Shown here: positions 8,026-61,191 of the stretch, piece after piece
Layout of the letters: each line of letters opens with the position of its first letter
Position numbering within the stretch: the stretch's first letter is position 1
IMG/VR virus record: IMGVR_UViG_3300037010_003311
Span: 62,001-126,000 of that record
Direction: 5' to 3' (one strand)
DNA length: 64,000 nucleotides
Notes under the pieces: generated by a model
What the model was told of the DNA's origin: nothing
The model's database searches: none
Seen by the model: only the letters and a program-made list of their open reading frames with translations
Position numbers and translations under genes: made by a program

Positions 8026-8127
8026 ATGAAAAAAATCAATGAAGTTGAAAATTTAAGAATACGAATATATGTAACTAAAGTGGCCGAAATAGTAGGTATA
8101 GTAATCTTACTATTTCTTATAATATAG
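8026..8127 (+). CDS. 33-aa putative single-pass membrane peptide (not in ORF track)
   Basis: MKKINEVENLRIRIYVTKVAEIVGIVILLFLII*; basic N-terminus, hydrophobic C-terminus; fills the gap after rIIA. Confidence 0.5.
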   Translation: MKKINEVENLRIRIYVTKVAEIVGIVILLFLII

Positions 8128-8131
8128 AAAT
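8121..8131 (+). promoter_or_regulatory. AATATAGAAAT motif (putative phage promoter)
   Basis: Exact 11-mer about 80 nt upstream of the thyX/queD operon; recurs at other operon starts. Confidence 0.6.
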
Positions 8132-8212
8132 CAATTAGTATCTTAGGAAGCAGAAAATTATTTCAGTATTTTAAGATGCTAAAAATAAAGAAAAGAGTAA
8201 AGGAGAAAACGA

Positions 8213-8815
8213 ATGGCCATAGATTCCAGGAAACAAACTGAAGCGGTACCAACAACAATACTAAAACCGGTAAAGTTGATAACTAGTACTCCATTAGATA
8301 TTTGCTCAAGAGCGATTAGAACTTGTTGGCAAAGTCATGAAAAATCTGATTCTGAACAAGTAATGTATTGTGAAAAGTGTAATCACTACTATACTGATTT
8401 AGATACTAAAAAGTGCAACTGTGGTAATACGATTTTAATCAAGCAAACATATTGTGGTGAAAAAGATAAAGAACTCATCGATCGGATTGGTAATAAATTT
8501 AAGCATGCTAGTACTTTAGAACACTTGATTATGACATTTAGTATTGATTTTGATTTAATGGCATATATGCAGATGAATGAAAATAAATACATAGTATATA
8601 ACTTTCCAGTATTAACTTTAAATTTACGATCGTTTATAGATATGCTAGAACTTGGGTTAAAACATCCTAGTGTATATGAGGCTAGAAATAAAAGCTTGCT
8701 ACAAATGTATAACGTTTTTCCAAAAGACTATAAATATTTGGTCGAGGAACGGATTTCACATTTAATAGGGCTTCTAGCTTTTAATACTAAACCAGAAGGG
8801 GTTACAAATGCCTAA
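8213..8815 (+). CDS. ThyX-like protein, part A (N-terminal motifs, Zn-ribbon insertion)
   Basis: TPLDICSRAIRTCWQSHEKSD and GEKDKELIDRIGNKFKHASTLEHL closely match the Campylobacter-type ThyX N-terminus; CEKC...CNC insertion; lacks RHR motif. Confidence 0.75.
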   Translation: MAIDSRKQTEAVPTTILKPVKLITSTPLDICSRAIRTCWQSHEKSDSEQVMYCEKCNHYYTDLDTKKCNCGNTILIKQTYCGEKDKELIDRIGNKFKHASTLEHLIMTFSIDFDLMAYMQMNENKYIVYNFPVLTLNLRSFIDMLELGLKHPSVYEARNKSLLQMYNVFPKDYKYLVEERISHLIGLLAFNTKPEGVTNA

Positions 8816-9428
8816 TCAAATTGAAAGAGTTGAGTTAGAGTATTCTAATTTTGATAAAGTTGAACCAGTAGTTCAAGATTTCTTACCTCATATAGCAGGC
8901 GAACATATTTTTTATACATTTCGTATATTTAATATAAGTAGAGCGCTATTGCAGGAAGTGGTAAGGCACCAACATCTTATTTCATACTCAGTTAAAAGTT
9001 CTAGATATACACTTAAAGAAGTAAAAGCCCATCCCGGGTTCGAGAAACTGTTTACTACTTATCTAGAAGATGGTAAAAAAGAATTTGATATAGATTCTGC
9101 TAGAGAAGCAGCCAAAGAGTTCCTGTTATTTGATGGGGATGATTTAGTTGATAAGTACAGCATTTATGCTTTAGAGAATCTACGAAAAGCACTTGTAGCT
9201 GGTATTTCAAATGATCATGCTAAATATTGTTTACCAGAAAACTATAAAACTGAAGTTCGTATGACAATTAATGTTAATGCTTTAAATAATTTTATCACTC
9301 TTCGTAGTAATACCGCAGCATTATGGGAAGCACAATTACTAGCAAAAGATCTTTTGGCAGCAATACCAGAACACCATTTGCATCGGTTTACGGCTTGTCA
9401 CTCAAATCCAGAAATGTCTAAAAAATAA
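8808..9428 (+). CDS. thyX: Flavin-dependent thymidylate synthase, part B (catalytic motifs)
   Basis: ISRALLQEVVRHQHLISYSVKSSRYT, AKYCLPENYKTE, TINVNALNNFITLRS, ALWEAQ. Confidence 0.85.
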   Translation: MPNQIERVELEYSNFDKVEPVVQDFLPHIAGEHIFYTFRIFNISRALLQEVVRHQHLISYSVKSSRYTLKEVKAHPGFEKLFTTYLEDGKKEFDIDSAREAAKEFLLFDGDDLVDKYSIYALENLRKALVAGISNDHAKYCLPENYKTEVRMTINVNALNNFITLRSNTAALWEAQLLAKDLLAAIPEHHLHRFTACHSNPEMSKK

Positions 9429-9443
9429 ATCAAAAGGAAAAGA

Positions 9444-10064
9444 ATGAAATGGATAATTGATAAAAGTTTTAGTTTTTGTTACGGTCATCGGGTTCATAAC
9501 CAAAGACTGGATACTAAGTTTACTGAGTCAGGAGATGCGTGTTTAGCATGTAGACACCTGCATGGCCATGAGGGTCTAGTAAAAGTATTTTTAACTGGAC
9601 CATCGAGTAATGTTAAAACTACAGGAATGGTTACAGATTTTAAACATCTAGGCTGGTTTAAAAATTTTATTGATGATACGCTTGATCATAAATTCATTAT
9701 GGATTTACGAGATCCATTATTCCCATCAGAATTTCCGCTAGTTTGTACACCAACTGGCAAATTAGTACTTGACCGGGTGCATATAATGGACCAAGGGTTT
9801 ATGATTCCAGATCTAACATATATTAAAAATATTATTAATAATGATGAAGTTCTAAAATCGCAAGCGGAAATTGATGCTATTTTTGAAAAATATGAGGGTG
9901 CAGTATTTGTCGATTTCGTACCAACTTCCGAAAATCTTGCAGCCTGGTTATTAAAAGTATGTCAGGAAAAAATGAAAGGTTTAACCGATGTTCAAGTAGT
10001 AGCGGTTGAGTATTGGGAAACTCCAAAATCACATTGTCGGGTACAAGCCACGGACTTAATCTAA
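9444..10064 (+). CDS. queD: 6-carboxy-tetrahydropterin synthase (QueD/PTPS family)
   Basis: FCYGHRV, CRHLHGHEG, MVTDF, LDHKF, PTSENLA, YWETPKSHC. Confidence 0.92.
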   Translation: MKWIIDKSFSFCYGHRVHNQRLDTKFTESGDACLACRHLHGHEGLVKVFLTGPSSNVKTTGMVTDFKHLGWFKNFIDDTLDHKFIMDLRDPLFPSEFPLVCTPTGKLVLDRVHIMDQGFMIPDLTYIKNIINNDEVLKSQAEIDAIFEKYEGAVFVDFVPTSENLAAWLLKVCQEKMKGLTDVQVVAVEYWETPKSHCRVQATDLI

Positions 10065-13017: not shown

Positions 13018-13060
13018 ATATTACTAAAATACCGATTTTAGTAATATAGCGATAACTAGT

Positions 13061-13071
13061 AATATAGAAAT
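13061..13071 (+). promoter_or_regulatory. AATATAGAAAT motif
   Basis: Exact 11-mer 44 nt upstream of the RNase H start. Confidence 0.6.
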
Positions 13072-13114
13072 ACTAATTAGAAGCACGCAGTAATTTTAAT
13101 ACAAGTGAGGATAA

Positions 13115-13606
13115 ATGTTTAAAATTTATACGGATGGTAGTTGTATTCATAATGCTAATATTACAAAGATAGCTATTGGGCCAGGTGGTTGGGCATATGC
13201 CCTATATAATAATGATACCTTAGTATTTAAGCATTCTGGTTCAGTCAGGAATACTACTAATGGTAGAATGGAGGTTATGGCAGTACATGAGGCTATTAGA
13301 TTTATCGCTAGTAACCAACAATTGGCTAACCCAAATAGTATTGGTCATCCCGGAGGCTTTGAAATCCTAAGTGATAGTAAATATGCTATTGATGGATTAA
13401 ATATCTGGTTAGATGGTTGGGCAAAGAAAAATTTTTCTGGAATTAAACATCCGGATTTATGGAAAAATATATACCATCTTATTCATAACGATCTAAAATC
13501 GTTGAAAATTACTGGGGTCTGGGTAAAAGGCCATAATGGTGACGAAGGGAACGAAGTTGTAAATGCTTTGGCCCAAGAAGCAGCTTACTCAATTAAAGGA
13601 TTATAA
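13115..13606 (+). CDS. rnhA: Ribonuclease HI
   Basis: YTDGSC, TTNGRMEVMAV, SDSKY, WVKGHNGDEGNEVVNALA (last catalytic Asp appears as Asn). Confidence 0.92.
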   Translation: MFKIYTDGSCIHNANITKIAIGPGGWAYALYNNDTLVFKHSGSVRNTTNGRMEVMAVHEAIRFIASNQQLANPNSIGHPGGFEILSDSKYAIDGLNIWLDGWAKKNFSGIKHPDLWKNIYHLIHNDLKSLKITGVWVKGHNGDEGNEVVNALAQEAAYSIKGL

Positions 13607-15064: not shown

Positions 15065-15460
15065 ATGATACCAGTTTCAAAATTACTTGGCCCTATTAAG
15101 GATGAAAAAACTATGGAAATTAGGGAAACCTATGATCCAGAATGTGCTCACTATATAGTTGTGAATAAAAAATCAAATCATGGTTATAATGTAAAATTTA
15201 TTACCGATAAACCAAACAATAGTATTACCCCAACCTGTAATGTTAAGGTTTCGTGTAATTGTGATAATTTTCAATTTATGTATGCGTATGTATTATATAA
15301 AAATGATGGTTTATATAATCCCCATCGTTTAGTACTGACACCACCAGTTGAGAAAAATCCAAATATGATTATTGGAGCGTGTAAGCATGTAAAATTAGCC
15401 CTCTATAGAAAAATGACTAATAATGTACAAAAACTTGCAACTACGGATGGGGATATCTAA
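15065..15460 (+). CDS. SWIM zinc-finger protein
   Basis: VSCNCDNF...ACKHV (CxC...CxH). Confidence 0.75.
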   Translation: MIPVSKLLGPIKDEKTMEIRETYDPECAHYIVVNKKSNHGYNVKFITDKPNNSITPTCNVKVSCNCDNFQFMYAYVLYKNDGLYNPHRLVLTPPVEKNPNMIIGACKHVKLALYRKMTNNVQKLATTDGDI

Positions 15461-16782
15461 TGGCAATAAAAATAGATTTTACTGAATTTACTTTGGATCT
15501 ACCAGAAGTCAAAGATGCTTCTATTTATAAAACTGGTACTACTAATCACCAGTTTTCGGAAACCGGATTATATTCCGAACAGATTTTTGGTCCATTAAAA
15601 AATTATAAGTGTAGTTGTGGAAACGTAGTATCTAAAATAAATGCTGGTATACGGTGTGAAATATGTAATGTACTTTGTGAATCAGATAAATTACGAAATA
15701 CCCAATTTGCTAGAATAGAATTACCAAAAGGTATTTTTATTATTCTACCTACACTTATAAAAAATTTACATGATATCTTTGGACAGAATCCAATTAAAAG
15801 TATTATGGATAAAGCGCAGTATCAACATAATTGTGACAGACCTTATTATTTTTTAAATAACTTTTCTAAATTAGTAAAGATTCCAGAAAAGGATAAAGAT
15901 AAAGATAACTATCTAAAAGATTATCCAGTTTATGATATATCTTCTTTACATAGATTATTTCAATATCTTAGAGATGAGACTGATGCTTTAGATTCTAGAA
16001 TTTCAAAAAAATATCTAGATTATGTTTTTGTAGATTATGTTTTAGTGCTACCAGTTAATAGTAGACCGATTGTAAAGATTACAAATGAAAAAAGTAATGT
16101 TCATCCAATTACAGAAAAGTATGCGGAAATATTAAAAAATAAGAGCAATAGTCTTGTTGATGACTTTCATGAAATCAATGAAGAGATGTTTGGTGCAACT
16201 GTTTATAAATATCAAAATAGTGTTAATCAGTTATACGATATAATTTTGCAGAAAAACTTTCAGCAGAAAGAAAGCGTGAGTCGTGATTACATGATGGGTA
16301 AAATTATTGAACATTCCGGCCGTTTTGTTATTGTGCCAAATCCAATTCTAAAACCATATCAAATAGGTTTACAATCTCACGCTATCAAAGAGATAAATGT
16401 CCCGGAAATTAAACGATTCATTTATCAAAAATATGCTCAAAACTCAAGTGATGAAAAGATTATGGATTATCTAATAAATATAGATTCTCATAATTCATTT
16501 AGTTCAGTATTTAATATATCTGATGATTTACTAAAAGAATTTTTGGCAGAACAAGCCAAGAATTTAATTTATGTTTGTGAACGCCCACCTGTGTTATGGA
16601 AGTATAACGTTACCGCCTTTTTTCTAGGTTTAGTAAATTGGTCTGAAAAAGATGTTACTAGAGTTATGGTACCATTTACTTCAGTTGTAAAGAAAATAAT
16701 ATCTAAATTCACTAAACCAGACGCGAAGAAAATGAATTATAGAAAATCAATTAAAAGTGTTTCTGTAAATTTTGGTAAGTAG
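15460..16782 (+). CDS. rpoC: Multisubunit RNA polymerase beta' N-terminal piece
   Basis: GLYSEQIFGP, CSCG/CEIC zinc site, VLPVNSRP, MGKIIEHSGRFVI, ERPPVLW. Confidence 0.92.
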   Translation: MAIKIDFTEFTLDLPEVKDASIYKTGTTNHQFSETGLYSEQIFGPLKNYKCSCGNVVSKINAGIRCEICNVLCESDKLRNTQFARIELPKGIFIILPTLIKNLHDIFGQNPIKSIMDKAQYQHNCDRPYYFLNNFSKLVKIPEKDKDKDNYLKDYPVYDISSLHRLFQYLRDETDALDSRISKKYLDYVFVDYVLVLPVNSRPIVKITNEKSNVHPITEKYAEILKNKSNSLVDDFHEINEEMFGATVYKYQNSVNQLYDIILQKNFQQKESVSRDYMMGKIIEHSGRFVIVPNPILKPYQIGLQSHAIKEINVPEIKRFIYQKYAQNSSDEKIMDYLINIDSHNSFSSVFNISDDLLKEFLAEQAKNLIYVCERPPVLWKYNVTAFFLGLVNWSEKDVTRVMVPFTSVVKKIISKFTKPDAKKMNYRKSIKSVSVNFGK

Positions 16783-16863
16783 ATTACAATATTGTATCTA
16801 AGTAGTTAAACGGCTCCAAGAGCTAAACCAAAAACCTATAAAGGCATTAAATGGAAATTTTAA
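16690..16863 (+). pseudogene. Decayed NUMOD1/IENR1-type homing-endonuclease tail at the beta' split
   Basis: The beta'N frame reads KKIISKF...RKSIKSVSVNFGK*ITILYLSS*TAPRAKPKTYKGIKWKF*, resembling NUMOD1 (SI.EA...G....KT.KG..WK) with two internal stops. Confidence 0.5.
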
Positions 16864-18740
16864 ACAATATGGTCATGCATTTAAATAGTTTAAATGCAAA
16901 ACGCTTTAACAGTGACTATGATGGTGATGGTCTTGGGTGTTACTCTTTACATAGTACCCAAGCTAAAAAAGAAGCAAGGCGATATATGACGCCTATATCA
17001 AATATCCAACATGAACACAATCTCGAAATGGTGGATACGCTAGAGCATGAAAGTATTCAAGCGGCATACATGCTTTCGCTTAAGGGATGGAAAAATTTCG
17101 ATTCAAATAAAATCGAATTAACTTTACAAAACATAAGCGAATTCCAAGCAGATATAAATACAGTAATTAAAACTCCAAATATAGCAGTAAGGCTTATAGA
17201 TGAAGATATAGTATTACCATATAATTCTGTTCTAATTAACGCATCATTCGATATAGAAGAGTTAATATATACTGATAGTAGATTATTGTATAAAAAGAAT
17301 TTACTAGAACTGATTAAGCTTTTATACGACTTTGTAGAGAATGCTAAATTTCATGATAAATTACATAACTTCAATAAAGTACTACTTGAATGTAGTACAG
17401 TTGTTAGTTATTGTAATACAAGTTTTGAACTGAATCACTTTGCGGTGAATCATAAAGCAATTGAGGATTTCAAAAAAACACTTATAAATGAACCATTTAC
17501 TGGTTTCCATCAAAACCAAATGCTATTTGATACACATGTTAAAAATCTTATTTGTCATGATGAAGATAATATTCTAACGAATGTATTCAATTCTGGAGCA
17601 AGGATCAAAAATGTACAGTTGTTAAAAGCTGCTAGTAATAATGGTATCCCAACTGATATTAATGGTAGAGCATTTAAGCATAATATTAAAAACTCATTAC
17701 TTGATGGATTAACCGAAGAAGAGTTCTTTATGACTGGGGATAGTGCAAGACTAGCCTTAGCTCAAAGGCAAGATTCTATTCCAAAGGGTGGTGAACTTCA
17801 ACGGAAGATATATTTTACAACTGGATTCTTGCAACTCAATAATATTGCAGATTGTGGATCAGAAAAATATTTTACAATAGTGGTTAGTGATAGACATCAT
17901 TTAGCTTCCTTATATGGAAGATGGTATATTACTGATGATAATCCAAAACTACGTTTCGTTCGTTTAGATGATACTAAATTAATTGGTACGGAAATTAAAG
18001 TTCGTTCCCCAATTTATTGTAAGTCTGGTGATTATGCTATTTGTGATAGATGCTTTGGTTCTAAAAAACCAGATTCAGATAACATTGGTGCAGCTATTGG
18101 ATCATATATTGCGGAAAGTATCATTCAGTCAATTCTTAGAACTCACCACTTTAGTGGAGCTTTCATTACTGAGATTAAAAAAGAATTCAATGAAATTATT
18201 GAATCGTTACAATTCGAATCACCTAACATTATAAAAGGTAGTCCAGAAAATATTGATCGGTATAAACAATATCTTTTAGATAATTACTATAAGGAAGAAG
18301 ATTTTACTATAACCAAAACTAGTAAAAACTGCTACGAAATTGATGTTATTAATTTACCATTAAATGATGACTCTGTTAAAAAACTACAGGTTATTACTTC
18401 ATATATTGATAAGAATCGAGATAGTGATAATTTGATTTCACCAGAAGAGATATATAAATTTCTTAAAAATGAAATCATTATGCCTAATGATATTTTGAGT
18501 ATATATGTTGAATTAATTATTGGTATTCTATTTTACGATGAAGATGGTATTATGATTAGATATTCTGATAAAGAGATTAACTTCCAGTTGGCTTTAAAGA
18601 ATGTTATTTCGCATATTGATCCAAGAATGTCTTTCTTCTATGGATTCAACGATGGTAAGATTAGTGATTGTTATGATGCCGAAACCGAGGGAACGGTCCT
18701 AAAACATATGTATCAGGATTTAACTGATATCTATTATTAA
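16851..18740 (+). CDS. rpoC: Multisubunit RNA polymerase beta' C-terminal piece (catalytic)
   Basis: RFNSDYDGD (NADFDGD equivalent), bridge helix GELQRKI, DCGS, RSPIYC...CDRCFG, trigger loop IAESIIQSILRTHH. Confidence 0.95.
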   Translation: MEILNNMVMHLNSLNAKRFNSDYDGDGLGCYSLHSTQAKKEARRYMTPISNIQHEHNLEMVDTLEHESIQAAYMLSLKGWKNFDSNKIELTLQNISEFQADINTVIKTPNIAVRLIDEDIVLPYNSVLINASFDIEELIYTDSRLLYKKNLLELIKLLYDFVENAKFHDKLHNFNKVLLECSTVVSYCNTSFELNHFAVNHKAIEDFKKTLINEPFTGFHQNQMLFDTHVKNLICHDEDNILTNVFNSGARIKNVQLLKAASNNGIPTDINGRAFKHNIKNSLLDGLTEEEFFMTGDSARLALAQRQDSIPKGGELQRKIYFTTGFLQLNNIADCGSEKYFTIVVSDRHHLASLYGRWYITDDNPKLRFVRLDDTKLIGTEIKVRSPIYCKSGDYAICDRCFGSKKPDSDNIGAAIGSYIAESIIQSILRTHHFSGAFITEIKKEFNEIIESLQFESPNIIKGSPENIDRYKQYLLDNYYKEEDFTITKTSKNCYEIDVINLPLNDDSVKKLQVITSYIDKNRDSDNLISPEEIYKFLKNEIIMPNDILSIYVELIIGILFYDEDGIMIRYSDKEINFQLALKNVISHIDPRMSFFYGFNDGKISDCYDAETEGTVLKHMYQDLTDIYY

Positions 18741-18749
18741 GGGTATCTA

Positions 18750-19013
18750 ATGAATAATAATCTAGATAAAATTGCATCTAAGAACCAAACTAAACGATTG
18801 GTGCTTATTAATGGTTTAGGAGATACCGAAGTAGATTATATTTTGGAAGATGATAACATCGATAATGCAATCTATTATCTTTTATGCGCGAGGAACCATT
18901 TAATTGAACATAGTGATTTTCCATTAACCGCTTTAACTAGATTAGAGATTGCAGCAGCTGCAATCAGCCAAGCAATAATGGAAGTGGAAGCTAAAACAAT
19001 TTTCAGGACATGA
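18750..19013 (+). CDS. Hypothetical protein within RNAP cluster
   Basis: 87 aa, RBS AAGGG. Confidence 0.7.
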   Translation: MNNNLDKIASKNQTKRLVLINGLGDTEVDYILEDDNIDNAIYYLLCARNHLIEHSDFPLTALTRLEIAAAAISQAIMEVEAKTIFRT

Positions 19014-19025
19014 GGGAGATAAAGA

Positions 19026-21165: not shown

Positions 21166-21179
21166 AAAGGAAAATAATT

Positions 21180-21851: not shown

Positions 21852-21863
21852 ATAACTTATTTA

Positions 21864-21893
21864 GGGGGGGGTACAGTTATTGTACCTCTTTTT
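21864..21893 (+). terminator. Intrinsic terminator
   Basis: GGGGGTACA-GTTAT-TGTACCTC stem followed by TTTTT. Confidence 0.8.
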
Positions 21894-21930
21894 ATACCTA
21901 AAAATATAAATTAAAGTTTAAAGGAAATAA

Positions 21931-28181: not shown

Positions 28182-28233
28182 TTATTTCTATAGTAAAATT
28201 CTAAATAAATATTTAGAGTTAACATAGAAATAA
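28182..28233. repeat. Imperfect palindrome carrying two ATAGAAAT-type motifs in opposite orientation
   Basis: TTATTTCTAT...AATTCTAAATA-AA-TATTTAGAGTT...ATAGAAATAA. Confidence 0.7.
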
Positions 28234-36339: not shown

Positions 36340-36350
36340 ATTTCTATATT
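36340..36350 (-). promoter_or_regulatory. AATATAGAAAT motif, antisense to the + block
   Basis: Exact 11-mer on - strand; no - strand gene downstream. Confidence 0.4.
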
Positions 36351-36358: not shown

Positions 36359-36414
36359 AAACTTTTAGTAGTTATCAGTGGTATAGATTACTAACTGGTA
36401 ACTACTAAAAGTTT
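36359..36414. terminator. 21-bp inverted repeat
   Basis: AAACTTTTAGTAGTTATCAGT vs ACTGGTAACTACTAAAAGTTT, one wobble, flanked by T-runs. Confidence 0.75.
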
Positions 36415-36449
36415 TTATTTGGAATTTTTTTTGTTTTTTTGGGCAGGAA

Positions 36450-36480
36450 AATAAATACGAGGCTTAGCCTCGTATTTATT
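36450..36480. terminator. 14-bp perfect inverted repeat at end of - strand block
   Basis: AATAAATACGAGGC-TTA-GCCTCGTATTTATT, 6 nt past the stop of 36487-38733. Confidence 0.8.
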
Positions 36481-36486
36481 ATATGC

Positions 36487-47986: not shown

Positions 47987-48033
47987 TATTGTTTCCTCTT
48001 CCTGTAAATTAATACCGGTTACTTATAACCTAT

Positions 48034-48075
48034 TTGTTTTTCGACGACAGGAAAACGGTCGAAAACCGACCGTTA
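48034..48075 (-). terminator. Hairpin plus TCCTGTCG element
   Basis: - strand: TAA overlapping AACGGTCG-GTTTT-CGACCGTT, then TTCCTGTCGTCGAAAAAC. Confidence 0.6.
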
Positions 48076-53617: not shown

Positions 53618-53886
53618 ATATCTTTTTTACCTTTCGATTTAAATACATAAATATGTATTCATAAAAAATAAGTTATCGTATTTTCTTTTATGAAGACATG
53701 AATTGCCACTTAGTTTGCATTAGCTACTAAGTGGCAAGATTATTTAGGTCTCTTCATCCTCATAAAAGAGGCGGATTCTTCAACCATAGCCTTAAGTAGC
53801 TATTTCATGAAGTATTGGAGCCGGGTATCCCGCGGTCTCTTGCCGTATCGAGTTTATGTAACACCTGCTTACAAATACTAATTAAT

Positions 53887-53914
53887 TGGTGGAGTACAAT
53901 TATAAATGTACCCC
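53887..53914 (-). other. tRNA-Ala-like microhelix / hairpin
   Basis: - strand GGGGTAC-ATTTATAATT-GTACTCC-ACCA: 7-bp stem with G3:U70-type pair and ACCA end. Confidence 0.35.
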
Positions 53915-53924
53915 TCATAATCTT

Positions 53925-54371
53925 TTAGTTAGATACTGGTGTAGTATCTACTGGTGCAGTTGTAGCATCTTCGGCAGCACTAGCTGCTTCATTAGCCGCA
54001 ACTACCTCTTCTGAGACTGGTACATCCGAATCATATAGTACATCTTCAGCAGGCTGTTGTGCACTCTCAAACTCATTTTCTTTAATAAGATTAAGCTCTA
54101 ATAGGAATTCTAAAATTTCTTTAGATATTGCAGCACGAATCAATTCATCATCAAAATCAGCAGGTGAAAGATATGTTGTTTGGATAGTTGGAACTACTTC
54201 TTCACCCTCAACCGGTTCTTTTGGCACTTGAGAGATGATTTCAATATATAGATTACTTTGTTCAAGAGATTGTACTAGTTTATAATGGTATTGTAAACCA
54301 TTAGCTAGAAGGTTAGTTGGGTGAATCAATTTTGGAAATGCTATAATATTTGTACTAACAACTGCGCTCAT
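53925..54371 (-). CDS. Hypothetical protein with acidic tail
   Basis: 148 aa, TAATG coupling to upstream gene. Confidence 0.75.
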   Translation of the reverse strand: MSAVVSTNIIAFPKLIHPTNLLANGLQYHYKLVQSLEQSNLYIEIISQVPKEPVEGEEVVPTIQTTYLSPADFDDELIRAAISKEILEFLLELNLIKENEFESAQQPAEDVLYDSDVPVSEEVVAANEAASAAEDATTAPVDTTPVSN

Positions 54372-54577
54372 TATGCTTCCTTTTTAGTGCGTTTTGGATA
54401 TTCTGTCTCGCGAGCTTTTAGCGCCGCTTTCCAAGGTGCTGCAAGTTTACGGAATTTTGAAAGAGCAACTCTTGCTCTTTTACCAGCCGCTTTATTATTG
54501 GAATTTATTAATTCCAGTTCTTTTGTAAACTCATTAAGAGTATTTTTTATTTCTTCTGTAATAGCGCTATATGCCAT
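54371..54577 (-). CDS. Small basic histone H1/Hc1-like nucleoid protein
   Basis: NKAAGKRARVALSKFRKL matches the NKAAG.RARK.S.. motif. Confidence 0.65.
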   Translation of the reverse strand: MAYSAITEEIKNTLNEFTKELELINSNNKAAGKRARVALSKFRKLAAPWKAALKARETEYPKRTKKEA

Positions 54578-54611: not shown

Positions 54612-54622
54612 ATTTCTATAAT
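54612..54622 (-). promoter_or_regulatory. ATTATAGAAAT motif variant
   Basis: One mismatch to consensus, 35 nt upstream of 54577. Confidence 0.5.
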
Positions 54623-54646: not shown

Positions 54647-55480
54647 TTAACTCATAAAAAGTTCGTTATAGATACTCGTTAATTCCTTAGTTAGATCATC
54701 GCGAAATTGGATAGTATCATTGAATGGTAATTTATTTGCTATATTCCAACAAACTACATTATCTTCCTCTTCCCCCCATATTTTATGGTAAGTTTTATCT
54801 TTATATCCATTATCTTGGCGAAACTGATTTAAAATATTCTTTGCTCGATATAATTTAAGTAGATCGATTAATTTATAACCAAGAGAAAGCCATAGTTCCA
54901 TAAATTTTTGAAAAATGATTATACTATTAGAACCGATTAGAGTAAACTTGATAATATCTTCGCACCCAGCAAGAAATGCTTCTTGATCAAAAGGATGATT
55001 CGTATAATTTTGTTCTTGCGAATAGCATATCATAAAGGTTGCAGTCTTTATTGAACCATTGATCTCGTTATGGCTACCAGCTTTCGTTGATAGATCATTT
55101 TTATATTGTTCCATCATTGTAAGACTTAATAAGAAGTGGAATACATCTACTAATTCTACGGAAGCATTTAATAAATCGGGTTTACCATTTTTCTTCCACC
55201 ATTTCCAAGGGAATGATTCAATACCTTCGACCAGCTCGGCACGAATTGCTCTACCCCAGTTGTAATTACTTTTAATCCAATTAGCATCCACCGCTGCATT
55301 AAAACTAGATTGTAACTGGAAACACTCTTCCCAAAGTTTCATATTATTATGTAAAGCCGAATAATCATCATCCTTAATCTGTTCATATGACCCAATGGTA
55401 TTCCCGGAATTAATTTCCGCAATTTTATTAAGGCTATCAGCAATATTTGCTGTAACCTTATCTACTAAATTTTTATTCAT
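54647..55480 (-). CDS. dut: Dimeric all-alpha dUTPase (dUTPase_2)
   Basis: ELVEGIESFPWKWWK, VELVDVFHF, KNILNQFRQDNGYK..TY.K.W..EEDN. Confidence 0.92.
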   Translation of the reverse strand: MNKNLVDKVTANIADSLNKIAEINSGNTIGSYEQIKDDDYSALHNNMKLWEECFQLQSSFNAAVDANWIKSNYNWGRAIRAELVEGIESFPWKWWKKNGKPDLLNASVELVDVFHFLLSLTMMEQYKNDLSTKAGSHNEINGSIKTATFMICYSQEQNYTNHPFDQEAFLAGCEDIIKFTLIGSNSIIIFQKFMELWLSLGYKLIDLLKLYRAKNILNQFRQDNGYKDKTYHKIWGEEEDNVVCWNIANKLPFNDTIQFRDDLTKELTSIYNELFMS

Positions 55481-56475
55481 GATTTTACCTTAATCCAATA
55501 TTCAAAACATTCCCCAATACCGGCAATGAGATGTAAGTGTTTAAATTTTTTGTATTCCAAGTTTTGATAATAATTAATCAATATGTTTTTAATTGGTAAA
55601 TATAGATCATCGTTAATCAATTTTGTAAAGATATAGTCGTAATTGATAGTAGCATCATCCTGCATAATTTTTACAAGCCAATCATAGTATTGGGCTATAG
55701 CAGTTTTGGTTGGTTCTAATAAAAGTCTAGTACTTTCTAAATCTAAGTTAGTTGGGTAAGTTAAAAGATATTTAATTATACCAATCATAGAATCTTCCAC
55801 ACCAGAACTAGATAAGCCCACACCAACACTCTGCGGACGAAATGTATTAGACATACTTGCCAGTTGCAGATTATTAAGAATATCCCGAACACCTTTTGTT
55901 TTAAAAGCTAAAGCAAATTGTCGCAATTCCTCTAATTCATATTGAACGGCCTCTTGTTTTAAAATATATTCCAATCTTGGAATAAGACCTTCAATATTAA
56001 TTTCGGTAAAATTTAATTTGATATTAAATCTTTGTAGTAGAGCTGGATCAAGCTTTTGAATATTATTCGTCGTAGCTATGAATGCGACATTTGGTTGATA
56101 TTTTTCAAGAAATCCATCTTTAAGTACTGATAAGGCTTTCGCACTTAGATTATCGATCTCTTCACAAACGATAATTCTTTGCTTACTAGCTGTAGGAGCT
56201 CTTACAATCCAAGACGCTAGTTTATCAACATCATCAACTGAACGACCAAGAACAAAAACATCTTCGGCATGCTTAATAAAACTATTAATCAATACTTTAT
56301 TAATAGTAGTTTTTCCAACACCCCCTGGCCCATAAGATATAATATTACCTTGGATATAACCCTGCTCTACAAATTTCTTAATTGTGAATGCTTTTTCTTC
56401 ATCTGGAAATACAATCTCTTCTATAAATTTAGGCCTATACCGCTCGAACCAAGCTGCTTGCATAACATTGTGCAT
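55477..56475 (-). CDS. Clamp loader AAA+ subunit (T4 gp44/RFC-like)
   Basis: WFERYRPK..EE, GPGGVGKTT, CEEIDNL. Confidence 0.9.
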   Translation of the reverse strand: MHNVMQAAWFERYRPKFIEEIVFPDEEKAFTIKKFVEQGYIQGNIISYGPGGVGKTTINKVLINSFIKHAEDVFVLGRSVDDVDKLASWIVRAPTASKQRIIVCEEIDNLSAKALSVLKDGFLEKYQPNVAFIATTNNIQKLDPALLQRFNIKLNFTEINIEGLIPRLEYILKQEAVQYELEELRQFALAFKTKGVRDILNNLQLASMSNTFRPQSVGVGLSSSGVEDSMIGIIKYLLTYPTNLDLESTRLLLEPTKTAIAQYYDWLVKIMQDDATINYDYIFTKLINDDLYLPIKNILINYYQNLEYKKFKHLHLIAGIGECFEYWIKVKS

Positions 56476-56511
56476 TCTTTATCCTTTTTAATATTTTTAC
56501 CTCTCTATAAT

Positions 56512-56522
56512 ATTTCTATATT
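56512..56522 (-). promoter_or_regulatory. AATATAGAAAT motif inside a 12-bp inverted repeat
   Basis: Exact 11-mer 37 nt upstream of clamp loader; TCTCTATAATAT/ATATTATAGAGA at 56502-56529. Confidence 0.6.
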
Positions 56523-56550
56523 ATAGAGAATCGTTTTTCTAGTGTAAATT

Positions 56551-57597
56551 TTATATTCCTGGAAGAGTTGGATATTTACTGAAGTCTACACTTTCATTGG
56601 TATGGTACTCATTTTTAAGTAGCTTTTGTAAAGTATCTAAATCAATAGTTGCTCCACAAGCGTTACGATGGCCACCTCCACCAAATTTTTTAGCATAAAC
56701 CGAAGCATCACATAATGTATCTAAACTACGGAATGAAAGTACTACCTTTAAATCATCTGTTATAAAATACATCAACGCTGGTTTATTTGTAAGTTTACAG
56801 AGTTCATTCCCTACTTCTGAAATATTTTCGGTTAGATTCAAGCATACAAATTCTTCTGAATCAATAGTTATAGTTCTATATTTTTTAACTTTAGATGCAA
56901 CTGCTTGGTCTTTTACTCTTAATAGAGTTGCACCAATTTTAATGGCCTCATCCAGATCAAAGTTATCTACTAGATCTAAGAATGATTCTAAATTATTTGG
57001 AACAACTGAATATCTTAAATATTCAGAAACTTCTTTTGAATGAGCCAATGACCAGTTCCAAAGATCCCTATCCTGGATATAATCAGAAATAATATCCATA
57101 TTGCGCAGTCGTTTAACTTCATGTAATTTATTGGAAGTTGCAAAATAATCATAAGTAATTTTGGCACCCGAACGGTTCATATCAAATACTAATTCTAAAT
57201 TTTCAATCCCTGAATTTTCTAACTCTTTTAAATTGGCTTCCGCTGTTTTATGATGATCAAGAATGGTTACTGAGTTAAACTTAGTTGTGAGATCTTTTAT
57301 AATTTCGGGGGAAGCACTAAAATCTAAAAAGAGTAAATCAAAACTTTTGCTCATGTCATTTGCTAATACTTCATAGATATCTTCACCATACTGTATAGGT
57401 AAACATTTATATGATATTTCCATATCAATGAAATAGCTTTCTGCTATAAATGCCGCAGCTAATCCATCCATACAATTTTTATGATATAAGACTGTAACTT
57501 GTGGTGGGCATGGTAATGACTGCTCCAAACTATGAACATACCTCACAATATCACTGATTCTATTTACTGATAATTGTCTACCTTCATATGTACTCAT
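56551..57597 (-). CDS. DHH/DHHA1 phosphoesterase
   Basis: YHKNCMDG, FLDFS, LDHH, DRDLW, GGGHRNACG. Confidence 0.92.
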   Translation of the reverse strand: MSTYEGRQLSVNRISDIVRYVHSLEQSLPCPPQVTVLYHKNCMDGLAAAFIAESYFIDMEISYKCLPIQYGEDIYEVLANDMSKSFDLLFLDFSASPEIIKDLTTKFNSVTILDHHKTAEANLKELENSGIENLELVFDMNRSGAKITYDYFATSNKLHEVKRLRNMDIISDYIQDRDLWNWSLAHSKEVSEYLRYSVVPNNLESFLDLVDNFDLDEAIKIGATLLRVKDQAVASKVKKYRTITIDSEEFVCLNLTENISEVGNELCKLTNKPALMYFITDDLKVVLSFRSLDTLCDASVYAKKFGGGGHRNACGATIDLDTLQKLLKNEYHTNESVDFSKYPTLPGI

Positions 57598-58391
57598 TCA
57601 ACATCCTTTGATTTTTTAACACACTCAATTACTGCATCAACTTGACAAGTTATATATTCATGCGAGTCTTCGGTGTATGGTATGGTCATATTAATTAAAT
57701 AATCGAAACCAAAATATTCTAAAGCAAATTCTGATATATGATAACCATCTTCTTTCTCTTTATTAATAGCTGAGTTCAAAATTTTTACACAATAAACACT
57801 ATGAATACTTTCATCAACTAAACCACTGTACTCTTCCGGAAAGCGAAAATCGTTTACCAATATAAGTTTTTTAGTGCTTCTATTAACCGCGGTAATTACA
57901 AGTTGAGTCCATACTTCTTTAGTAAATACCAGTTTCCATATTTCACCAATTTGTCTAGTCAACTGTTTAATAGACATATGTAATTGTTCTGGAATCTCAT
58001 GCTCCAGTCTATAACCAGTTCCAAGGATATGGTTTAGAATAGCAAGTAGCCCCATTTTATTATATTCGAACCCTTTTTGACTAAGTCTTATAGCGGTATC
58101 GTTTATACAATCATTGATACGGTGCAGAATACCGGCACTATTAAAAGTATAAAGATCATTTAATTCTGTATCGGGGATATCCGTGATATCCATATTCATA
58201 AGTTGGGAAGCATAATTTTTTAGAAAAAATGCAAACTGTAGAGTTTCTAAATCATTTTTATCTTGTTCGAAGATTTTAGTTAAAAATAATCTTTCCTTTT
58301 TCTCACCACTTAATAAAATAATTTTTTTATATCGATCTTTAACTAGTGGTACTGGTGATACTGGTAGGGGGTCATTTAAATCATTATGCAT
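57594..58391 (-). CDS. Deoxynucleoside-monophosphate kinase-like protein, degenerate P-loop
   Basis: KIILLSGE.., FAFFLK, RQIGE..., LVNDFRFPEE, SEFAL; Walker A GKS/T/D absent. Confidence 0.65.
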   Translation of the reverse strand: MHNDLNDPLPVSPVPLVKDRYKKIILLSGEKKERLFLTKIFEQDKNDLETLQFAFFLKNYASQLMNMDITDIPDTELNDLYTFNSAGILHRINDCINDTAIRLSQKGFEYNKMGLLAILNHILGTGYRLEHEIPEQLHMSIKQLTRQIGEIWKLVFTKEVWTQLVITAVNRSTKKLILVNDFRFPEEYSGLVDESIHSVYCVKILNSAINKEKEDGYHISEFALEYFGFDYLINMTIPYTEDSHEYITCQVDAVIECVKKSKDVE

Positions 58392-58424: not shown

Positions 58425-58435
58425 ATTTCTATATT
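58425..58435 (-). promoter_or_regulatory. AATATAGAAAT motif
   Basis: Exact 11-mer 34 nt upstream of 58391. Confidence 0.6.
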
Positions 58436-58476: not shown

Positions 58477-58525
58477 AATTCCTTTTTCTGCGACAGGAAA
58501 CCGATGGGTGGGATTATCTCCCACC
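58477..58525. repeat. 49-bp direct repeat, copy 1
   Basis: AATTCCTTTTTCTGCGACAGGAAACCGATGGGTGGGATTATCTCCCACC; 48/49 identical to 59931-59979. Confidence 0.95.
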
Positions 58526-59928
58526 TATTCCAATTGAAATATATAATTCCCGGAATCCCAAATTATATTATATTGGCTCGGATTGCTATTATTTTGAAAT
58601 CCAGGTATTAATTTATAAGGATTTTTATTTTTCCAATAAAAAGAGTTGGGATAGCTTGTACCAATTTCTTGGAAACCAAGTCGTCGGTATAAGTTGCCAT
58701 TCGACCAGCGTCTATTTACATAGGTTTTAATGCTTCCCGTGTGATCAGCCCGAAATGCTTTAAGCAATCTGCTTGCTGCACCATGAACATTATAACCAAG
58801 CTTATTGCAAAAACGCATTAGCTCCCAATCTGCGCTTTTGTCAATTCCTTCTTTGCTGGAAGCAAAATTCATAATGCTAATGAGATCATCATTATAATAT
58901 AGACCATAAGCAATTGAACTTGAGCAGTAACCTTGTAAGTGATTAGCTTCTAGAAACGGTTTTATATCATATTTAGGTACCGGCTTAATAGTATGATCCT
59001 CGGCTTCTAGTTGTATGCTTCTACCAAGAGTGTTCTGGATTATCGATTTCCAAATATTTTGCTTGGTTTTATTTACCCATTCGTTTTCGAAGATATGAAA
59101 AAGTTGGATACCTTTAGTCTGGCATAATTTAGTTTTATGTAAATGTCTATTTTTGCAATAATTAAAATCATTCTGTTGTTTACAGGTATGTTTATTTTGT
59201 CCACAATAACTATGCCAATATATACCATTATATTCGATTGCTAAATTATAGTCAGGTATATAGATATCTAATTCTAATGGTTTTATAATAGATCTGGAAC
59301 CAAGTATTATCTTAGAATCAATTAAACTAGAAATATAATTATTTATCTCATCTTCTGCCAAACTTTGGTTATAATATTGTGAGACCCCAATATCTAATTT
59401 TTTTAATTGTTTATGTGCGGTACTCTGATTACATTTAAAATATTCGGTGCATTTAATTAAATGAAATCGGTCATTAATAATAAAATTCGATATCCAAAAA
59501 TTTTTATTGTTCCAATTTTTTTGAATGGTTATATCATTATTAAATTTTCTCAACTGTTTTTCATTTTTAATTTTTTTACTATTTGATGGATTAGAAGCTC
59601 CATATTTTATTAGACAAGTATCTTTAACTTTATCTTTAGTATTAGCTAGTTGTGAAATATATTCTACTCCATAATTTTTAGAACAGGTTTCTTTTCTTTT
59701 TTTAATCGATTCGATTTTTAAATCTTCTTTTATAATTTCTTTGCATTCAATAGAGCAATATTTTGTAAATCCATACCCAATCTTCCAAGATATAAAATGA
59801 TTACAGTTTGGGTTAGAGCATTTAGCTTGTTCAAAGCTTTTGCCACTTTTTAAAAATCTGGATATAAAAGTCCTATCCACTTTTTTATTAATATCTAGTT
59901 CTGGATAAAAATTTAAAAAATCTTGCAT
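58525..59928 (-). mobile_element. Hef-like homing endonuclease gene with C-terminal GNAT-like domain
   Basis: ELDIYIPDYNLAIEYNGIYWHS; FLEANHLQG; ELMRFC...GAASRLLK; flanked by 49-bp direct repeats. Confidence 0.85.
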
Positions 59929-59930
59929 CT

Positions 59931-59979
59931 AATTCCTTTTTCTGCGACAGGAAACCGATGAGTGGGATTATCTCCCACC
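59931..59979. repeat. 49-bp direct repeat, copy 2
   Basis: Contains the last codons and stop of 59968-60198, a hairpin, TCCTGTCG and the RBS of the endonuclease gene. Confidence 0.95.
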
Positions 59980-60198
59980 CATCGCTGAACCTAACGCTTT
60001 TGATTTTTCTTCTTTTATTGTGACTACTAATTTTTCGAACTCACGTTGTGCGAATATTGGTAGCGACATATATTCAGTAAACCCCATGTTAAAGTTTGCA
60101 TAAGCTTGCAACTCCTGGAAGTTTTTTATTGCTGACATCCAATGATTTTCGGATAAATTATAAGGCGTAAAAAGATGAGGCTTTACGAAAAAACTCAA
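59968..60198 (-). CDS. Baseplate hub assembly protein (T4 gp51-like)
   Basis: Small protein with FTEYMSLPIF..REF motif directly after the gp26-like gene. Confidence 0.6.
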   Translation of the reverse strand: MSFFVKPHLFTPYNLSENHWMSAIKNFQELQAYANFNMGFTEYMSLPIFAQREFEKLVVTIKEEKSKALGSAMGGR

Positions 60199-61129
60199 TT
60201 TCTGGGTTCACCGGCCACTTAAATTCCTTTCCACAGTTCACATTTTTACACATTTTGGATGCATAAAACTTTGGCTGATATTGAGCAAGACCCTCATAGC
60301 CGGAGATTGTTTCAATTAACTTTTCTAAAAGCACGATATTTTTAAGACCCATGATAAATGGATATATCTCTTCTTTAAGTTTTGTAAGTTTTATCACTAC
60401 ACCATCTTTATTTGAGATTGTTACAGATTTAATAAACATTATGAAAACAGAAAGTGTTTCAAATAGGTCATTATAATCTTCAAGATTTTGTCTTAATTCT
60501 TTATCATCTTTAATTGATAATACATCAAGTGAATCTTTTTCTGTTTGAAAACCCATCTCTATTTCAAAGCCTGGAGCAATAACTAAAGTTTCTTTAAAAT
60601 CGGTAAAGAGCATTTTCTTATCCCATTTCTTCGGTAGAGAATCTTTATGTAAGAGTTCATCCGGTCTAATGTTATGGATCTGTTTTTTATTGCAGTATGG
60701 GCACTCGAATTCTCGTTCACCTAAATCAGGATATGTTGCAAAAAGCAAGCCATAAGTTAGCATAGTTTTATCCGCTGAACCTAAATGCGCCATGAAATCA
60801 TTAATATCTTTAAATTTAATCTTGCCTTGAAAATCAGTATGGGCAAAAAGTATTTCATCAAATGCTTTAATAAATGTTTCACCACTCGCTTTTAAACTTT
60901 TGATATTGAGTTCTTCTAAACCTTTAATTGGTTTTACTAAAACCTTTGTTTTTAATAATGGTAAATCCACTTCGGTTTGGCGCCATTCACATAATGCATC
61001 TAATGCATTTAATGCGGTCATATATGCAGGAGCTGATACCGCTGGGGCGGTTTCCGAACCAGCTCCAGGGATACTACCAAGACCAGGTATCCCAAGATTA
61101 GCTAAGTCATTTTGTAGTTCTTCAATCAT
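60158..61129 (-). CDS. Baseplate hub protein (T4 gp26-like)
   Basis: V.LP..KTKV.VKP..G.EE, D...L.Y.L..ATY, CPYC and C-terminal CKNVNC. Confidence 0.7.
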   Translation of the reverse strand: MIEELQNDLANLGIPGLGSIPGAGSETAPAVSAPAYMTALNALDALCEWRQTEVDLPLLKTKVLVKPIKGLEELNIKSLKASGETFIKAFDEILFAHTDFQGKIKFKDINDFMAHLGSADKTMLTYGLLFATYPDLGEREFECPYCNKKQIHNIRPDELLHKDSLPKKWDKKMLFTDFKETLVIAPGFEIEMGFQTEKDSLDVLSIKDDKELRQNLEDYNDLFETLSVFIMFIKSVTISNKDGVVIKLTKLKEEIYPFIMGLKNIVLLEKLIETISGYEGLAQYQPKFYASKMCKNVNCGKEFKWPVNPEIEFFRKASSFYAL

Positions 61130-61180
61130 GATTTTCCTTTAAAATTTTAAATCTGTTTTTACAATTAGATACTAAAATGT

Positions 61181-61191
61181 ATTTCTATATT
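61181..61191 (-). promoter_or_regulatory. AATATAGAAAT motif
   Basis: Exact 11-mer 52 nt upstream of 61129. Confidence 0.6.

What the first reader, a model, noticed from the sequence alone, without database searches (positions are those of the whole stretch)
8121..61191. AATATAGAAAT: candidate promoter consensus for the phage-encoded RNA polymerase
Seen by eye: six exact copies (8121+, 13061+, 36340-, 56512-, 58425-, 61181-) and three one-mismatch copies (28221+, 28184-, 54612-), all in or at the edge of intergenic gaps. Seven are co-oriented and 34-127 nt upstream of a start codon, mostly of replication or nucleotide genes. A rough composition estimate gives under one exact copy by chance. 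Several sit in palindromic context (13052-13078, 36331-36359, 56502-56529). It differs from sigma70 boxes and from the phiKZ and AR9 promoter motifs as I recall them.
Basis: partly seen in the sequence, partly recalled or inferred. Interest (0 to 1): 0.62.

Follow-up and report, generated by a model that had tools for sequence, protein, structure and literature searches.

The report
Early-gene promoter motif of jumbo phage
The repeated word AATATAGAAAT is a real signal, conserved in related phages, that sits just in front of the replication and nucleotide genes of an uncultivated giant phage; it is most likely its early promoter, read by a polymerase other than the one encoded in this window.

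Summary
There are six exact copies at the stated places against 0.5 expected. The real core is TA-N-Y-ATAGAAATA. In the whole 226.7-kb record, 26 of the 30 good matches lie in the 6.5% of non-coding DNA.

The core is invariant at the same intergenic positions in relatives whose proteins are only 39-76% identical. It is absent from the intergenic DNA of more distant relatives.

It behaves like a promoter:
- it faces genes, usually 27-36 nt before the start codon;
- it follows terminators;
- it occupies divergent gene junctions.

It precedes replication and nucleotide genes and the window's own RNA polymerase genes. That polymerase is closest to the AR9 non-virion enzyme. A second motif, AACAAAT-N3-TA, matches the AR9 late promoter and precedes the head, tail and lysis genes.

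Relatives carry a second polymerase set beside virion genes. That block lies beyond the end of this 81%-complete record.

Best reading: this is the early promoter of a two-polymerase jumbo phage, read by the virion-type enzyme. That makes it a new member of a known kind. No RNA data could be obtained, so start sites and the polymerase assignment are inferred.

The parts
8117..8132 (+). Motif A copy (exact 11-mer 8121-8131; core ATAGAAAT 8124-8131), 81 nt before the ThyX-like gene 8213-8815
   Evidence: (PWM 15.6 bits)
8086..8116 (+). Upstream inverted repeat (9-bp arms with ATAG / CTAT, 13-nt loop) ending 7 nt before the core
13057..13072 (+). Motif A copy (exact), 43 nt before RNase H (13115-13606). 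It heads the gene run that contains the polymerase genes
   Evidence: 17.2 bits
13018..13047 (+). Upstream inverted repeat, 13-bp arms, 4-nt loop
28184..28231 (.). Divergent pair of motif A copies (28184-28194 minus strand, 28221-28231 plus strand) around a palindromic centre at 28200-28217. The plus copy faces gene 28358-28834; the minus copy faces no gene
   Evidence: the same kind of pair occurs in relatives
36340..36350 (-). Exact motif A copy at the convergent junction of the two gene arms. It points against the plus-strand genes, so it is an orphan or antisense copy
54612..54622 (-). Motif A copy (one mismatch to the 11-mer, core intact), 34 nt before the Hc1-like gene 54371-54577. Conserved at the same position in L009, L010, L011 and L013
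   Evidence: (19.2 bits)
56512..56522 (-). Exact motif A copy, 36 nt before the clamp-loader gene 55477-56475. It sits inside a 28-nt near-palindrome (56502-56529). The position is conserved in seven related loci
58425..58435 (-). Exact motif A copy, 33 nt before the dNMP-kinase-like gene 57594-58391. It is preceded by a terminator-like element at 58492-58530
61181..61191 (-). Exact motif A copy, 51 nt before gene 60158-61129 (323 aa, unknown). The position is conserved in L009-L012
15460..23907 (+). Non-virion-type multisubunit RNA polymerase genes. These are beta' N-part 15460-16782, beta' C-part 16851-18740 (catalytic NSDYDGD near its N-terminus) and beta 21931-23907. 19026-20300 may be the beta N-part. 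All lie downstream of motif A at 13061
48032..48038 (-). Motif C (AACAAAT), the only copy in the window. It lies directly after a terminator-like element and 45 nt before gene 46637-47986. It is conserved at the same position in L009 and L010
48046..48080 (-). Element B: hairpin followed by TTTCCTGTCG (terminator-like)
58492..58530 (-). Element B copy, upstream of motif A at 58425
59946..59984 (-). Element B copy, nearly identical to the one at 58492
1608..1645 (+). Element B copy on the plus strand

Best explanation
AATATAGAAAT is the centre of a promoter of consensus TA-N-Y-ATAGAAATA. About half the copies also have a CTAT box starting 14-16 nt upstream of the core. It drives the early and replication-phase genes of an uncultivated jumbo phage that follows the two-polymerase plan of AR9 and phiKZ.

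Proposed mechanism:
1. A polymerase that is present before any phage protein is made binds this AT-rich, nearly invariant element. The best candidate is a second, virion-type multisubunit polymerase, which relatives encode next to virion genes.
2. It starts transcription a few bases downstream. The element would then lie at about -10.
3. This yields short leaders that reach the ribosome-binding site 17-25 nt after the core.
4. These transcripts include the genes of the window's non-virion-type polymerase.
5. That enzyme then reads a second promoter class, AACAAAT-N3-TA, in front of head, tail and lysis genes.

Shown: the motif, its placement, its conservation, the split of gene classes between the two motifs, and the existence of two polymerase sets in the lineage.

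Inferred: that the motif starts transcription, where the start lies, and which polymerase reads it.
For: Enrichment:
- 6 exact copies in the window against 0.5 expected; 14 in the genome against 3 for the reversed word.
- At PWM >=13 bits, 30 hits, of which 26 lie in the 6.5% non-coding DNA and 19 of those face the local genes.

Placement:
- The start codon lies 24-38 nt after the core at 19 of the 33 sites where a start could be assigned.
- The ribosome-binding site lies at +17 to +25, so any start site must be within about 16 nt of the core.

After terminators: the hairpin+TTTCCTGTCG element is usually followed by either motif A or motif C.

Divergent junctions: copies face both ways at L013 8877-9172 and L068 7719-7889.

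Footprint:
- The core is invariant while the flanks diverge at four orthologous gaps in relatives with 73-76% identical clamp loaders, and at the clamp-loader operon down to 45% identity.
- 38 of 84 core copies in relatives lie in about 5% non-coding DNA.
- 0 of 39 are intergenic in more distant relatives of similar composition.

Gene classes:
- A precedes ThyX, RNase H, clamp loader, a dNMP-kinase-like gene, Dda helicase, a radical-SAM gene and an epimerase.
- C precedes prohead protease, tail fibres, endolysin and terminase.

Polymerase genes lie behind A: window 13061, and directly at L014 11824, L015 11092 and L016 12014.

The window enzyme is nvRNAP-like: best solved hit is AR9 nvRNAP 7S00_D at E 5e-16, then phiKZ gp74.

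The lineage has two sets:
- Two beta genes in G001 (97% complete) and G002 (100% complete).
- The second beta (1039 aa) of the 291.6-kb close relative lies beside gp53- and gp13-like genes.
- That block has no counterpart in this record except at its right end.

Literature:
- Every RNAP-encoding jumbo phage studied has a roughly 10-nt AT-rich conserved motif near -10 before early operons, read by the virion enzyme (PMC7598289).
- AR9 early promoter AAATATATATTAT-N6-G, AR9 late promoter AACA-N6-TA/G (PMC5312081).

Sigma-70-like sites are fewer than in shuffles, and no sigma or T7-type polymerase gene was found.
Against:
- No second polymerase is present in the 226.7-kb record itself. Its presence is inferred from relatives and from the record being 81% complete.
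- That the second set is packaged in virions is inferred only from its neighbours.
- Seven good copies face no gene: partners in pairs, 4607, 36340 in the window, and two more.
- One window copy overlaps an 11/12 sigma-70-like site at 56548-56520.
- In phiKZ-type phages the non-virion enzyme also reads a 'middle' class, so the replication genes behind A could belong to such a class.
- My gene calls are simple longest-ORF calls.
Confidence: 0.58

Rival explanations
1. The motif is a promoter read by the polymerase encoded in the window. It would be a 'middle' class of the non-virion enzyme, perhaps with a separate specificity subunit.
For: - The genes behind it are replication and nucleotide genes, which are middle-class in phiKZ-type phages.
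- The phiKZ non-virion enzyme is thought to serve both middle and late classes (PMC7598289).
- No other conserved motif was found in 57 gaps lacking A and C, so no separate 'earlier' class is visible.
Against: - The enzyme's own genes lie behind the motif in four lineages, so something else must read it first.
- The paired copies at the far left of the genome head arrays of small unknown genes typical of the earliest class, and they share the same core.
- The enzyme's closest characterised relative reads AACA-N6-TA/G, and that motif is present before the late genes.
Confidence: 0.17
2. The motif is read by the host RNA polymerase, alone or redirected by a phage factor in the manner of the T4 middle mode. 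ATAGAAAT would then be an unusual -10 / discriminator and CTAT an activator box.
For: - The bases before the core (T, A, N, Y) resemble the end of a TATAAT box. Three exact copies read TATAAT immediately before ATAGAAAT.
- One copy has a full 11/12 sigma-70-like match.
- The record itself shows only one phage polymerase.
- There is a two-part layout with a box about 16 nt upstream.
Against: - An invariant 8-10-nt core over phages whose proteins are only 39-76% identical is unlike degenerate sigma-70 promoters.
- Positions -6 and -5 are not conserved.
- Sigma-70-like sites are under-represented.
- No sigma-like gene was found.
- A distant relative uses a wholly different core with the same layout. 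This fits a co-evolving phage enzyme better than a shared host enzyme.
Confidence: 0.13
3. The motif is not a start signal. It would be a site on RNA (processing or stability) or a binding site for a regulator or replication protein that merely sits in 5' regions.
For: - Orientation and a fixed distance to the ribosome-binding site would also fit a leader element.
- Inverted-repeat context and paired copies recall operators.
- A convergent pair around an AT-rich stretch (G000 210134/210425) recalls an origin.
Against: - Copies at divergent junctions and directly after terminators have no upstream transcript to act on.
- The core itself is asymmetric and strand-specific.
- Mutual exclusivity with motif C, by gene class, fits two promoter classes.
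Confidence: 0.08

Closest known systems
[quoted passage not shown]
   Same: - AT-rich, about 10-13 nt, almost invariant within a phage.
- Found by over-representation before early operons.
- Placement is compatible with a centre near -10.
- The non-virion polymerase genes lie behind it.
- It differs from phage to phage; here it is lost in relatives below about 46% beta' identity.
- It shares the stretch AATATA with the AR9 motif.
   Different: - The sequence is new: it has a fixed G and the AAAT tail.
- It has an upstream CTAT box, which is an inverted copy of the core's first four bases.
- It often occurs in divergent pairs 37 nt apart.
- The virion and replication genes are T4-like (clamp loader, RNase H, Dda, rIIA, gp13/gp53-like, weak gp23 match) rather than phiKZ-like.
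- The start site, the timing and the enzyme are all untested.
AR9 non-virion polymerase late promoter AACA-N6-TA/G (PMC5312081, PMC9209446)
   Same: This applies to motif C, not to the finding. AACAAAT-N3-TA occurs 10 times in gaps out of 12 in the genome. All copies face late genes, 24-98 nt before the start codon. The window enzyme's nearest solved relative is the AR9 enzyme.
   Different: - Motif A lacks AACA at the required spacing.
- AR9 needs uracil in the template strand. This phage encodes ThyX and so probably has thymine or another modification.
- Three further bases (AAT) are fixed here.
T7/SP6-type single-subunit polymerase promoters (recalled: SP6 ends in CACTATAGAAG with the start at G)
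   Same: TATAGAA is shared with the SP6 start region as I recall it. Both are long and invariant.
   Different: - No T7-type polymerase gene was found (the control genomes did not ring, so this is weak).
- There is no conserved 17-nt upstream specificity region.
- This is a resemblance recalled from memory only.
T4 late promoter TATAAATA with gp55 (recalled)
   Same: It is a short AT-rich box near -10 in a phage with T4-like replication genes.
   Different: - TATAGAAATA has an extra G and A.
- It precedes replication genes, not late genes.
- No sigma-like gene was found.

Membership tests
Jumbo-phage early promoter read by a virion multisubunit RNAP | AT-rich, about 10-nt, highly conserved motif over-represented upstream of early operons | tested here: met
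Jumbo-phage early promoter read by a virion multisubunit RNAP | The phage encodes a second (virion) RNAP set besides the non-virion one | tested here: inconclusive
   Not present in the 81%-complete record. Present in relatives G001, G002 and the 291.6-kb close relative, beside virion genes. Packaging in virions was not tested.
Jumbo-phage early promoter read by a virion multisubunit RNAP | Non-virion RNAP genes are transcribed from it | tested here: met
   By position only: window 13061 heads the gene run that contains 15460-23907. Copies lie directly before the beta' operon in L014, L015 and L016.
Jumbo-phage early promoter read by a virion multisubunit RNAP | Transcription start a few nt downstream (motif centred near -10) | not testable with these tools
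Spacing to the ribosome-binding site limits the start to within about 16 nt of the core.
Jumbo-phage early promoter read by a virion multisubunit RNAP | Activity without host RNAP and without new protein synthesis | not testable with these tools
   Needs an infected culture or in vitro transcription.
Sigma-70-type promoter | TTGACA, 16-18 nt spacer, TATAAT | tested here: not met
   Only 1 of 9 window copies overlaps such a site. Such sites are fewer than in shuffles (94 against 123; 95 against 118). Positions -6/-5 are unconserved.
AR9-type non-virion RNAP late promoter | AACA, six bases, then TA or TG at the start | tested here: not met
   Motif A lacks it. A separate motif C has it.
T7/SP6-type promoter | Single-subunit RNAP gene in the phage | tested here: inconclusive
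   No PF00940 match, but the family rang in no control genome.
N4-type hairpin promoter | Short hairpin (5-7 bp stem, 3-nt loop) centred on the promoter, with a giant virion single-subunit RNAP | tested here: not met
   Inverted repeats are common, but they lie upstream with loops of 3-16 nt (mostly 4-13). No such polymerase was recognised in the large ORFs.

The most novel reading that the evidence does not exclude
The promoter is recognised through an inverted repeat, not just a linear word. In this phage the core's ATAG is mirrored by a CTAT box 10-12 nt upstream (23 of 45 sites against 5.8 expected), and full copies often form 37-nt-spaced divergent pairs. In a distant relative with a completely different core, 16 of 21 copies again carry an inverted copy of the core's 5' part upstream. 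This would mean that the early polymerase of this lineage, or a dimeric factor, reads a symmetric or extruded (hairpin/cruciform) element and that the asymmetric tail sets direction. That would be a mode not described for multisubunit phage polymerases.
Probability: 0.12. Interest if true: 0.7.

Novelty: new member of a known kind. Interest (0 to 1): 0.45.

Why it matters
How the virion polymerases of jumbo phages find their promoters is unsolved: no specificity subunit is known for them. This motif adds a lineage far from phiKZ and AR9 in which:
- the virion and replication genes are T4-like;
- two polymerase sets are present;
- thymidylate synthase and 7-deazaguanine-pathway genes are present;
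- many 260-315-kb metagenomic genomes are available.

In this lineage both promoter classes and a terminator class can be read straight from the sequence. That gives defined templates for in vitro work with the two enzymes and a way to sort the genes of these uncultivated phages into early and late sets.

It also shows that an AR9-like late promoter exists in a phage that probably does not use uracil DNA.

Tried and rejected
Things that failed or found nothing:
I did not try to reach reads another way.
- Close relatives by single-protein scans of viral contigs: none.
- INPHARED phages: only about 25% identical polymerases, and no match for the 1630-aa ORF.
- Whole-record search of ENA/Logan relatives through their loci: not held.
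- A second polymerase in this record: PF00623, PF00562, phrog_3295, phrog_3015, a catalytic-motif scan, self-BLAST, and PHROGs and Pfam on the large ORFs all found one set only.
- Sigma factors and a T7-type polymerase: none.
- Literature search for the word itself: nothing relevant.
- Rfam and tRNA scans of the window: nothing.
- A third promoter class in the gaps lacking A and C: no convincing motif.

Ideas rejected:
- A palindrome centred on the motif as a general feature: true for one or two sites only.
- The terminase gene as an exception to the gene-class split: it has motif C 35 nt upstream, and A is 224 nt away.
- The one-mismatch copies in coding sequence are chance.
Full report
**What the window is.** The window is bases 62001-126000 of a 226,657-bp IMG/VR virus record. 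The record is about 30% G+C, classed as linear, and CheckV rates it 81% complete. Simple ORF calls give 93.5% coding. Two gene arms converge at window 36310-36486.

The window carries these genes:
- a long rIIA-like gene;
- ThyX, in two pieces;
- QueD- and QueC-like genes;
- RecJ, RNase H and a DNA-polymerase piece;
- ribonucleotide reductase (RNR), a clamp loader and a dNMP-kinase-like gene;
- two homing-endonuclease genes;
- a split multisubunit RNA polymerase: beta' N-part 15460-16782, beta' C-part 16851-18740, beta 21931-23907.

**The observation.** Exact copies number 6 against 0.50 expected. The one-mismatch class as a whole is at chance, 18 against 12.9, and its other nine members lie in coding sequence.

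The record holds 14 exact copies against 3 of the reversed word. Aligning the copies shows the real signal is TA-N-Y-ATAGAAATA. ATAGAAAT occurs 49 times, 31 of them in the 6.5% of non-coding DNA. With a weight matrix at 13 bits or more there are 30 hits: 26 in non-coding DNA, of which 19 face the local genes.

**Placement.**
- I pooled 45 gene-facing copies from this record and its relatives. A start codon could be assigned at 33 of them, and at 19 of those it lies 24-38 nt after the core.
- The ribosome-binding site lies 17-25 nt after the core. Any start site must therefore lie within about 16 nt of the core. This rules out a role as a distant (-30) activator box and fits a -10-type element.
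- About half the copies (23 of 45; shuffles 5.8 +/- 2.3; other four-letter words 1-6) have CTAT starting 14 or 16 nt before the core. CTAT is an inverted copy of the core's ATAG.
- Upstream inverted repeats are longer than in shuffles: mean stem 6.6 against 4.94 +/- 0.15.

**Two other signals complete the picture.**

*Element B* is a hairpin with a variable stem of 9-16 bp, followed by TTTCCTGTCG. It always runs with the genes. It looks like a terminator with a fixed tail. Conserved terminator motifs are known in phiKZ and 201phi2-1 (PMC11512511).

*Motif C* is AACAAAT-N3-TA.
- AACAAAT occurs 25 times. Fifteen copies are in gaps, and all fifteen face genes.
- It matches the AR9 late promoter AACA-N6-TA/G (PMC5312081).
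- B is usually followed by either A or C.

*Gene classes.* A precedes ThyX, RNase H, clamp loader, a dNMP-kinase-like gene, Dda-like helicase, a radical-SAM gene, an epimerase and several unknowns. C precedes the prohead protease, tail fibres, endolysin and terminase. No third conserved motif appears in the remaining gaps.

**Relatives.** The clamp loader has homologues at 73-76%, 55-58% and 38-50% identity, some on contigs of up to 296 kb. Seven loci were fetched.
- The four window copies at 54612, 56512, 58425 and 61181 have counterparts at the same gaps in the 73-76% relatives. There the core is invariant while the flanks have diverged. The copy before the clamp-loader operon persists down to 45% identity.
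- Counting all loci that carry the motif, 38 of 84 core copies lie in about 5% non-coding DNA.
- In nine loci of more distant relatives (beta' C-part 40-46% identical, similar composition), 0 of 39 are intergenic.
- One distant relative, G001, instead has 21 copies of a different long motif. It behaves the same way, including divergent pairs and an inverted copy of its own 5' part upstream.
- This pattern suits a signal that co-evolves with a phage enzyme.

**Promoter or something else?**
- At two true divergent junctions in relatives, copies face both ways towards genes: L013 8877-9172 and L068 7719-7889.
- Copies also sit directly after terminator-like elements. An RNA-level signal would have no transcript to act on at these places.
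- The divergent pairs 37 nt apart (window 28184/28221; G000 272/309, 540/577, 1360/1397) head small genes with a conserved leader, both here and in L068.
- In arrays of such genes, one copy of each pair faces no gene. It may instead serve as the other arm of a hairpin.

**Which polymerase?**
- Only one polymerase set is detectable in the record. Its beta' C-part is closest to AR9 non-virion RNAP (7S00_D, E 5e-16), then to phiKZ gp74. Among cultured phages, the closest is the 'non-virion' beta' of the Staphylococcus phage Madawaska.
- Its genes lie behind motif A at 13061. In L014, L015 and L016 a pair of A copies sits directly before the beta' operon. An enzyme cannot be needed for its own first synthesis.
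- The lineage has a second set. G001 (97% complete) and G002 (100% complete) each have two beta genes. The second clusters with beta'-like pieces in a block that has no counterpart in our record.
- The 291.6-kb close relative carries the second beta (P0244, 1039 aa; PHROG 'RNA polymerase beta subunit', E 1e-46) beside gp53- and gp13-like virion genes.
- Genes at L068 17762-18867 match our record's right end (224850-225542). Our left end starts inside a paired-copy array like the one at L068 6291-7889. The missing DNA, including the second polymerase, therefore most likely lies between the record's two ends.
- This is the AR9/phiKZ plan: a virion enzyme reads early promoters, which include those of the non-virion enzyme's genes, and the non-virion enzyme reads late promoters (PMC7598289, PMC5312081).

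**Host polymerase.** Sigma-70-like sites are fewer than in shuffles. Only one A copy overlaps a good one. No sigma-like gene or T7-type polymerase gene was found. Three exact copies do read TATAAT just before the core, so a host-enzyme reading cannot be excluded.

**Verdict.** It is very probably a promoter, about 0.85 by my estimate. That it serves the window's polymerase is unlikely. The best assignment is the early class read by a virion-type second polymerase (0.58). The rivals are the window enzyme (0.17), the host enzyme (0.13) and a non-promoter role (0.08). It is a new member of a known kind.

**Limits.**
- The gene calls are crude.
- The record is incomplete.
- The resemblances to SP6, T4 late and N4 promoters come from memory only.

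Noticed in passing
window 48032-48038 (-); G000 134696, 146185, 151619, 162035, 189559, 194132, 195818, 201558, 201927, 203555, 210091, 221882, 224542, 225021 (all -): Second promoter-like motif, AACAAAT-N3-TA. It matches the AR9 non-virion-polymerase late promoter AACA-N6-TA/G. All 15 intergenic copies face genes, among them prohead protease, tail fibres, endolysin and terminase. The phage encodes ThyX, so it probably lacks the uracil DNA that AR9 recognition needs.
   Followed up: partly
window 1608-1645 (+), 48046-48080 (-), 58492-58530 (-), 59946-59984 (-), variant near 36436-36482 (-); about 18 in G000: Terminator-like element: a hairpin with a freely varying 9-16-bp stem and a tetraloop, then 0-3 T and a fixed TCCTGT(C/G)G. 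It always runs with the genes and is usually followed by motif A or motif C. Variants occur in distant relatives (TTTTTGTCGTTAG in G001, TTTCCTGTG in G002).
   Followed up: partly
window 58492-59984: The HNH homing-endonuclease gene 58525-59928 is flanked by two nearly identical copies of the terminator element. It looks as if the gene was inserted with a duplication of that site.
   Followed up: no
window 23900-25039: A homing-endonuclease-like gene (phrog_3339) sits directly after the polymerase beta gene, inside the polymerase gene cluster. The flanking ORFs 19026-20300, 20284-21165, 21180-21851 and 25042-26319 have no family match; they may include the beta N-part and a fifth, specificity subunit.
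   Followed up: partly
window 8213-9428: ThyX appears split into two overlapping ORFs: 8213-8815 (Pfam Thy1 N-part) and 8808-9428 (phrog_85).
   Followed up: no
window 54371-54577 (-): A 68-aa ORF matches Pfam Hc1 (chlamydial histone H1-like protein, E 2e-8). It lies directly behind a motif A copy, and its position is conserved in relatives.
   Followed up: no
window 9444-10064 and 28835-30271: QueD-like and QueC-like genes suggest 7-deazaguanine modification of the phage DNA. This could affect the single fixed G of the motif.
   Followed up: no
G000 132630-132680 (+) and 134875-134925 (-): The terminase large-subunit gene is flanked by inverted repeats of about 50 bp, each made of a hairpin plus an exact motif A copy. 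One copy reads sense and the other antisense to the gene.
   Followed up: no
G000 210134-210432: Two motif A copies point towards each other across 290 bp that contain an AT-rich repeat, inside a 778-nt gap. This could be a small RNA locus or an origin-like region.
   Followed up: no
G000 309-360, 577-628, 1397-1434; L068 6640-6698, 7187-7243, 7720-7775: The paired copies are followed by a conserved leader (an AATATTATTGAATAAGG-like stretch, a small AAGG/CCTT hairpin, then AGTACNGGAGTACAAAATG) before small unknown genes. The leader is conserved between this phage and the 291.6-kb relative.
   Followed up: partly
G000 ends (1-1434 and 224850-226657) against L068: The record starts inside a paired-promoter array, and its right end matches L068 17762-18867. 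The assembly probably broke at these repeats, and the missing part holds the second polymerase set.
   Followed up: partly
G001 (IMG/VR, 272,602 bp), e.g. 4708, 76212/76256, 94757/94780, 258030/258062: A distant relative has 21 copies of a different conserved intergenic element of about 45 nt (core TTTTAGAACTCGTATATATC). It has the same habits: divergent pairs and an inverted copy of its 5' part upstream.
   Followed up: partly
window 53618-53924: A 307-nt gap before the ribonucleotide reductase large-subunit gene has several hairpins but no motif A, B or C and no Rfam match.
   Followed up: no
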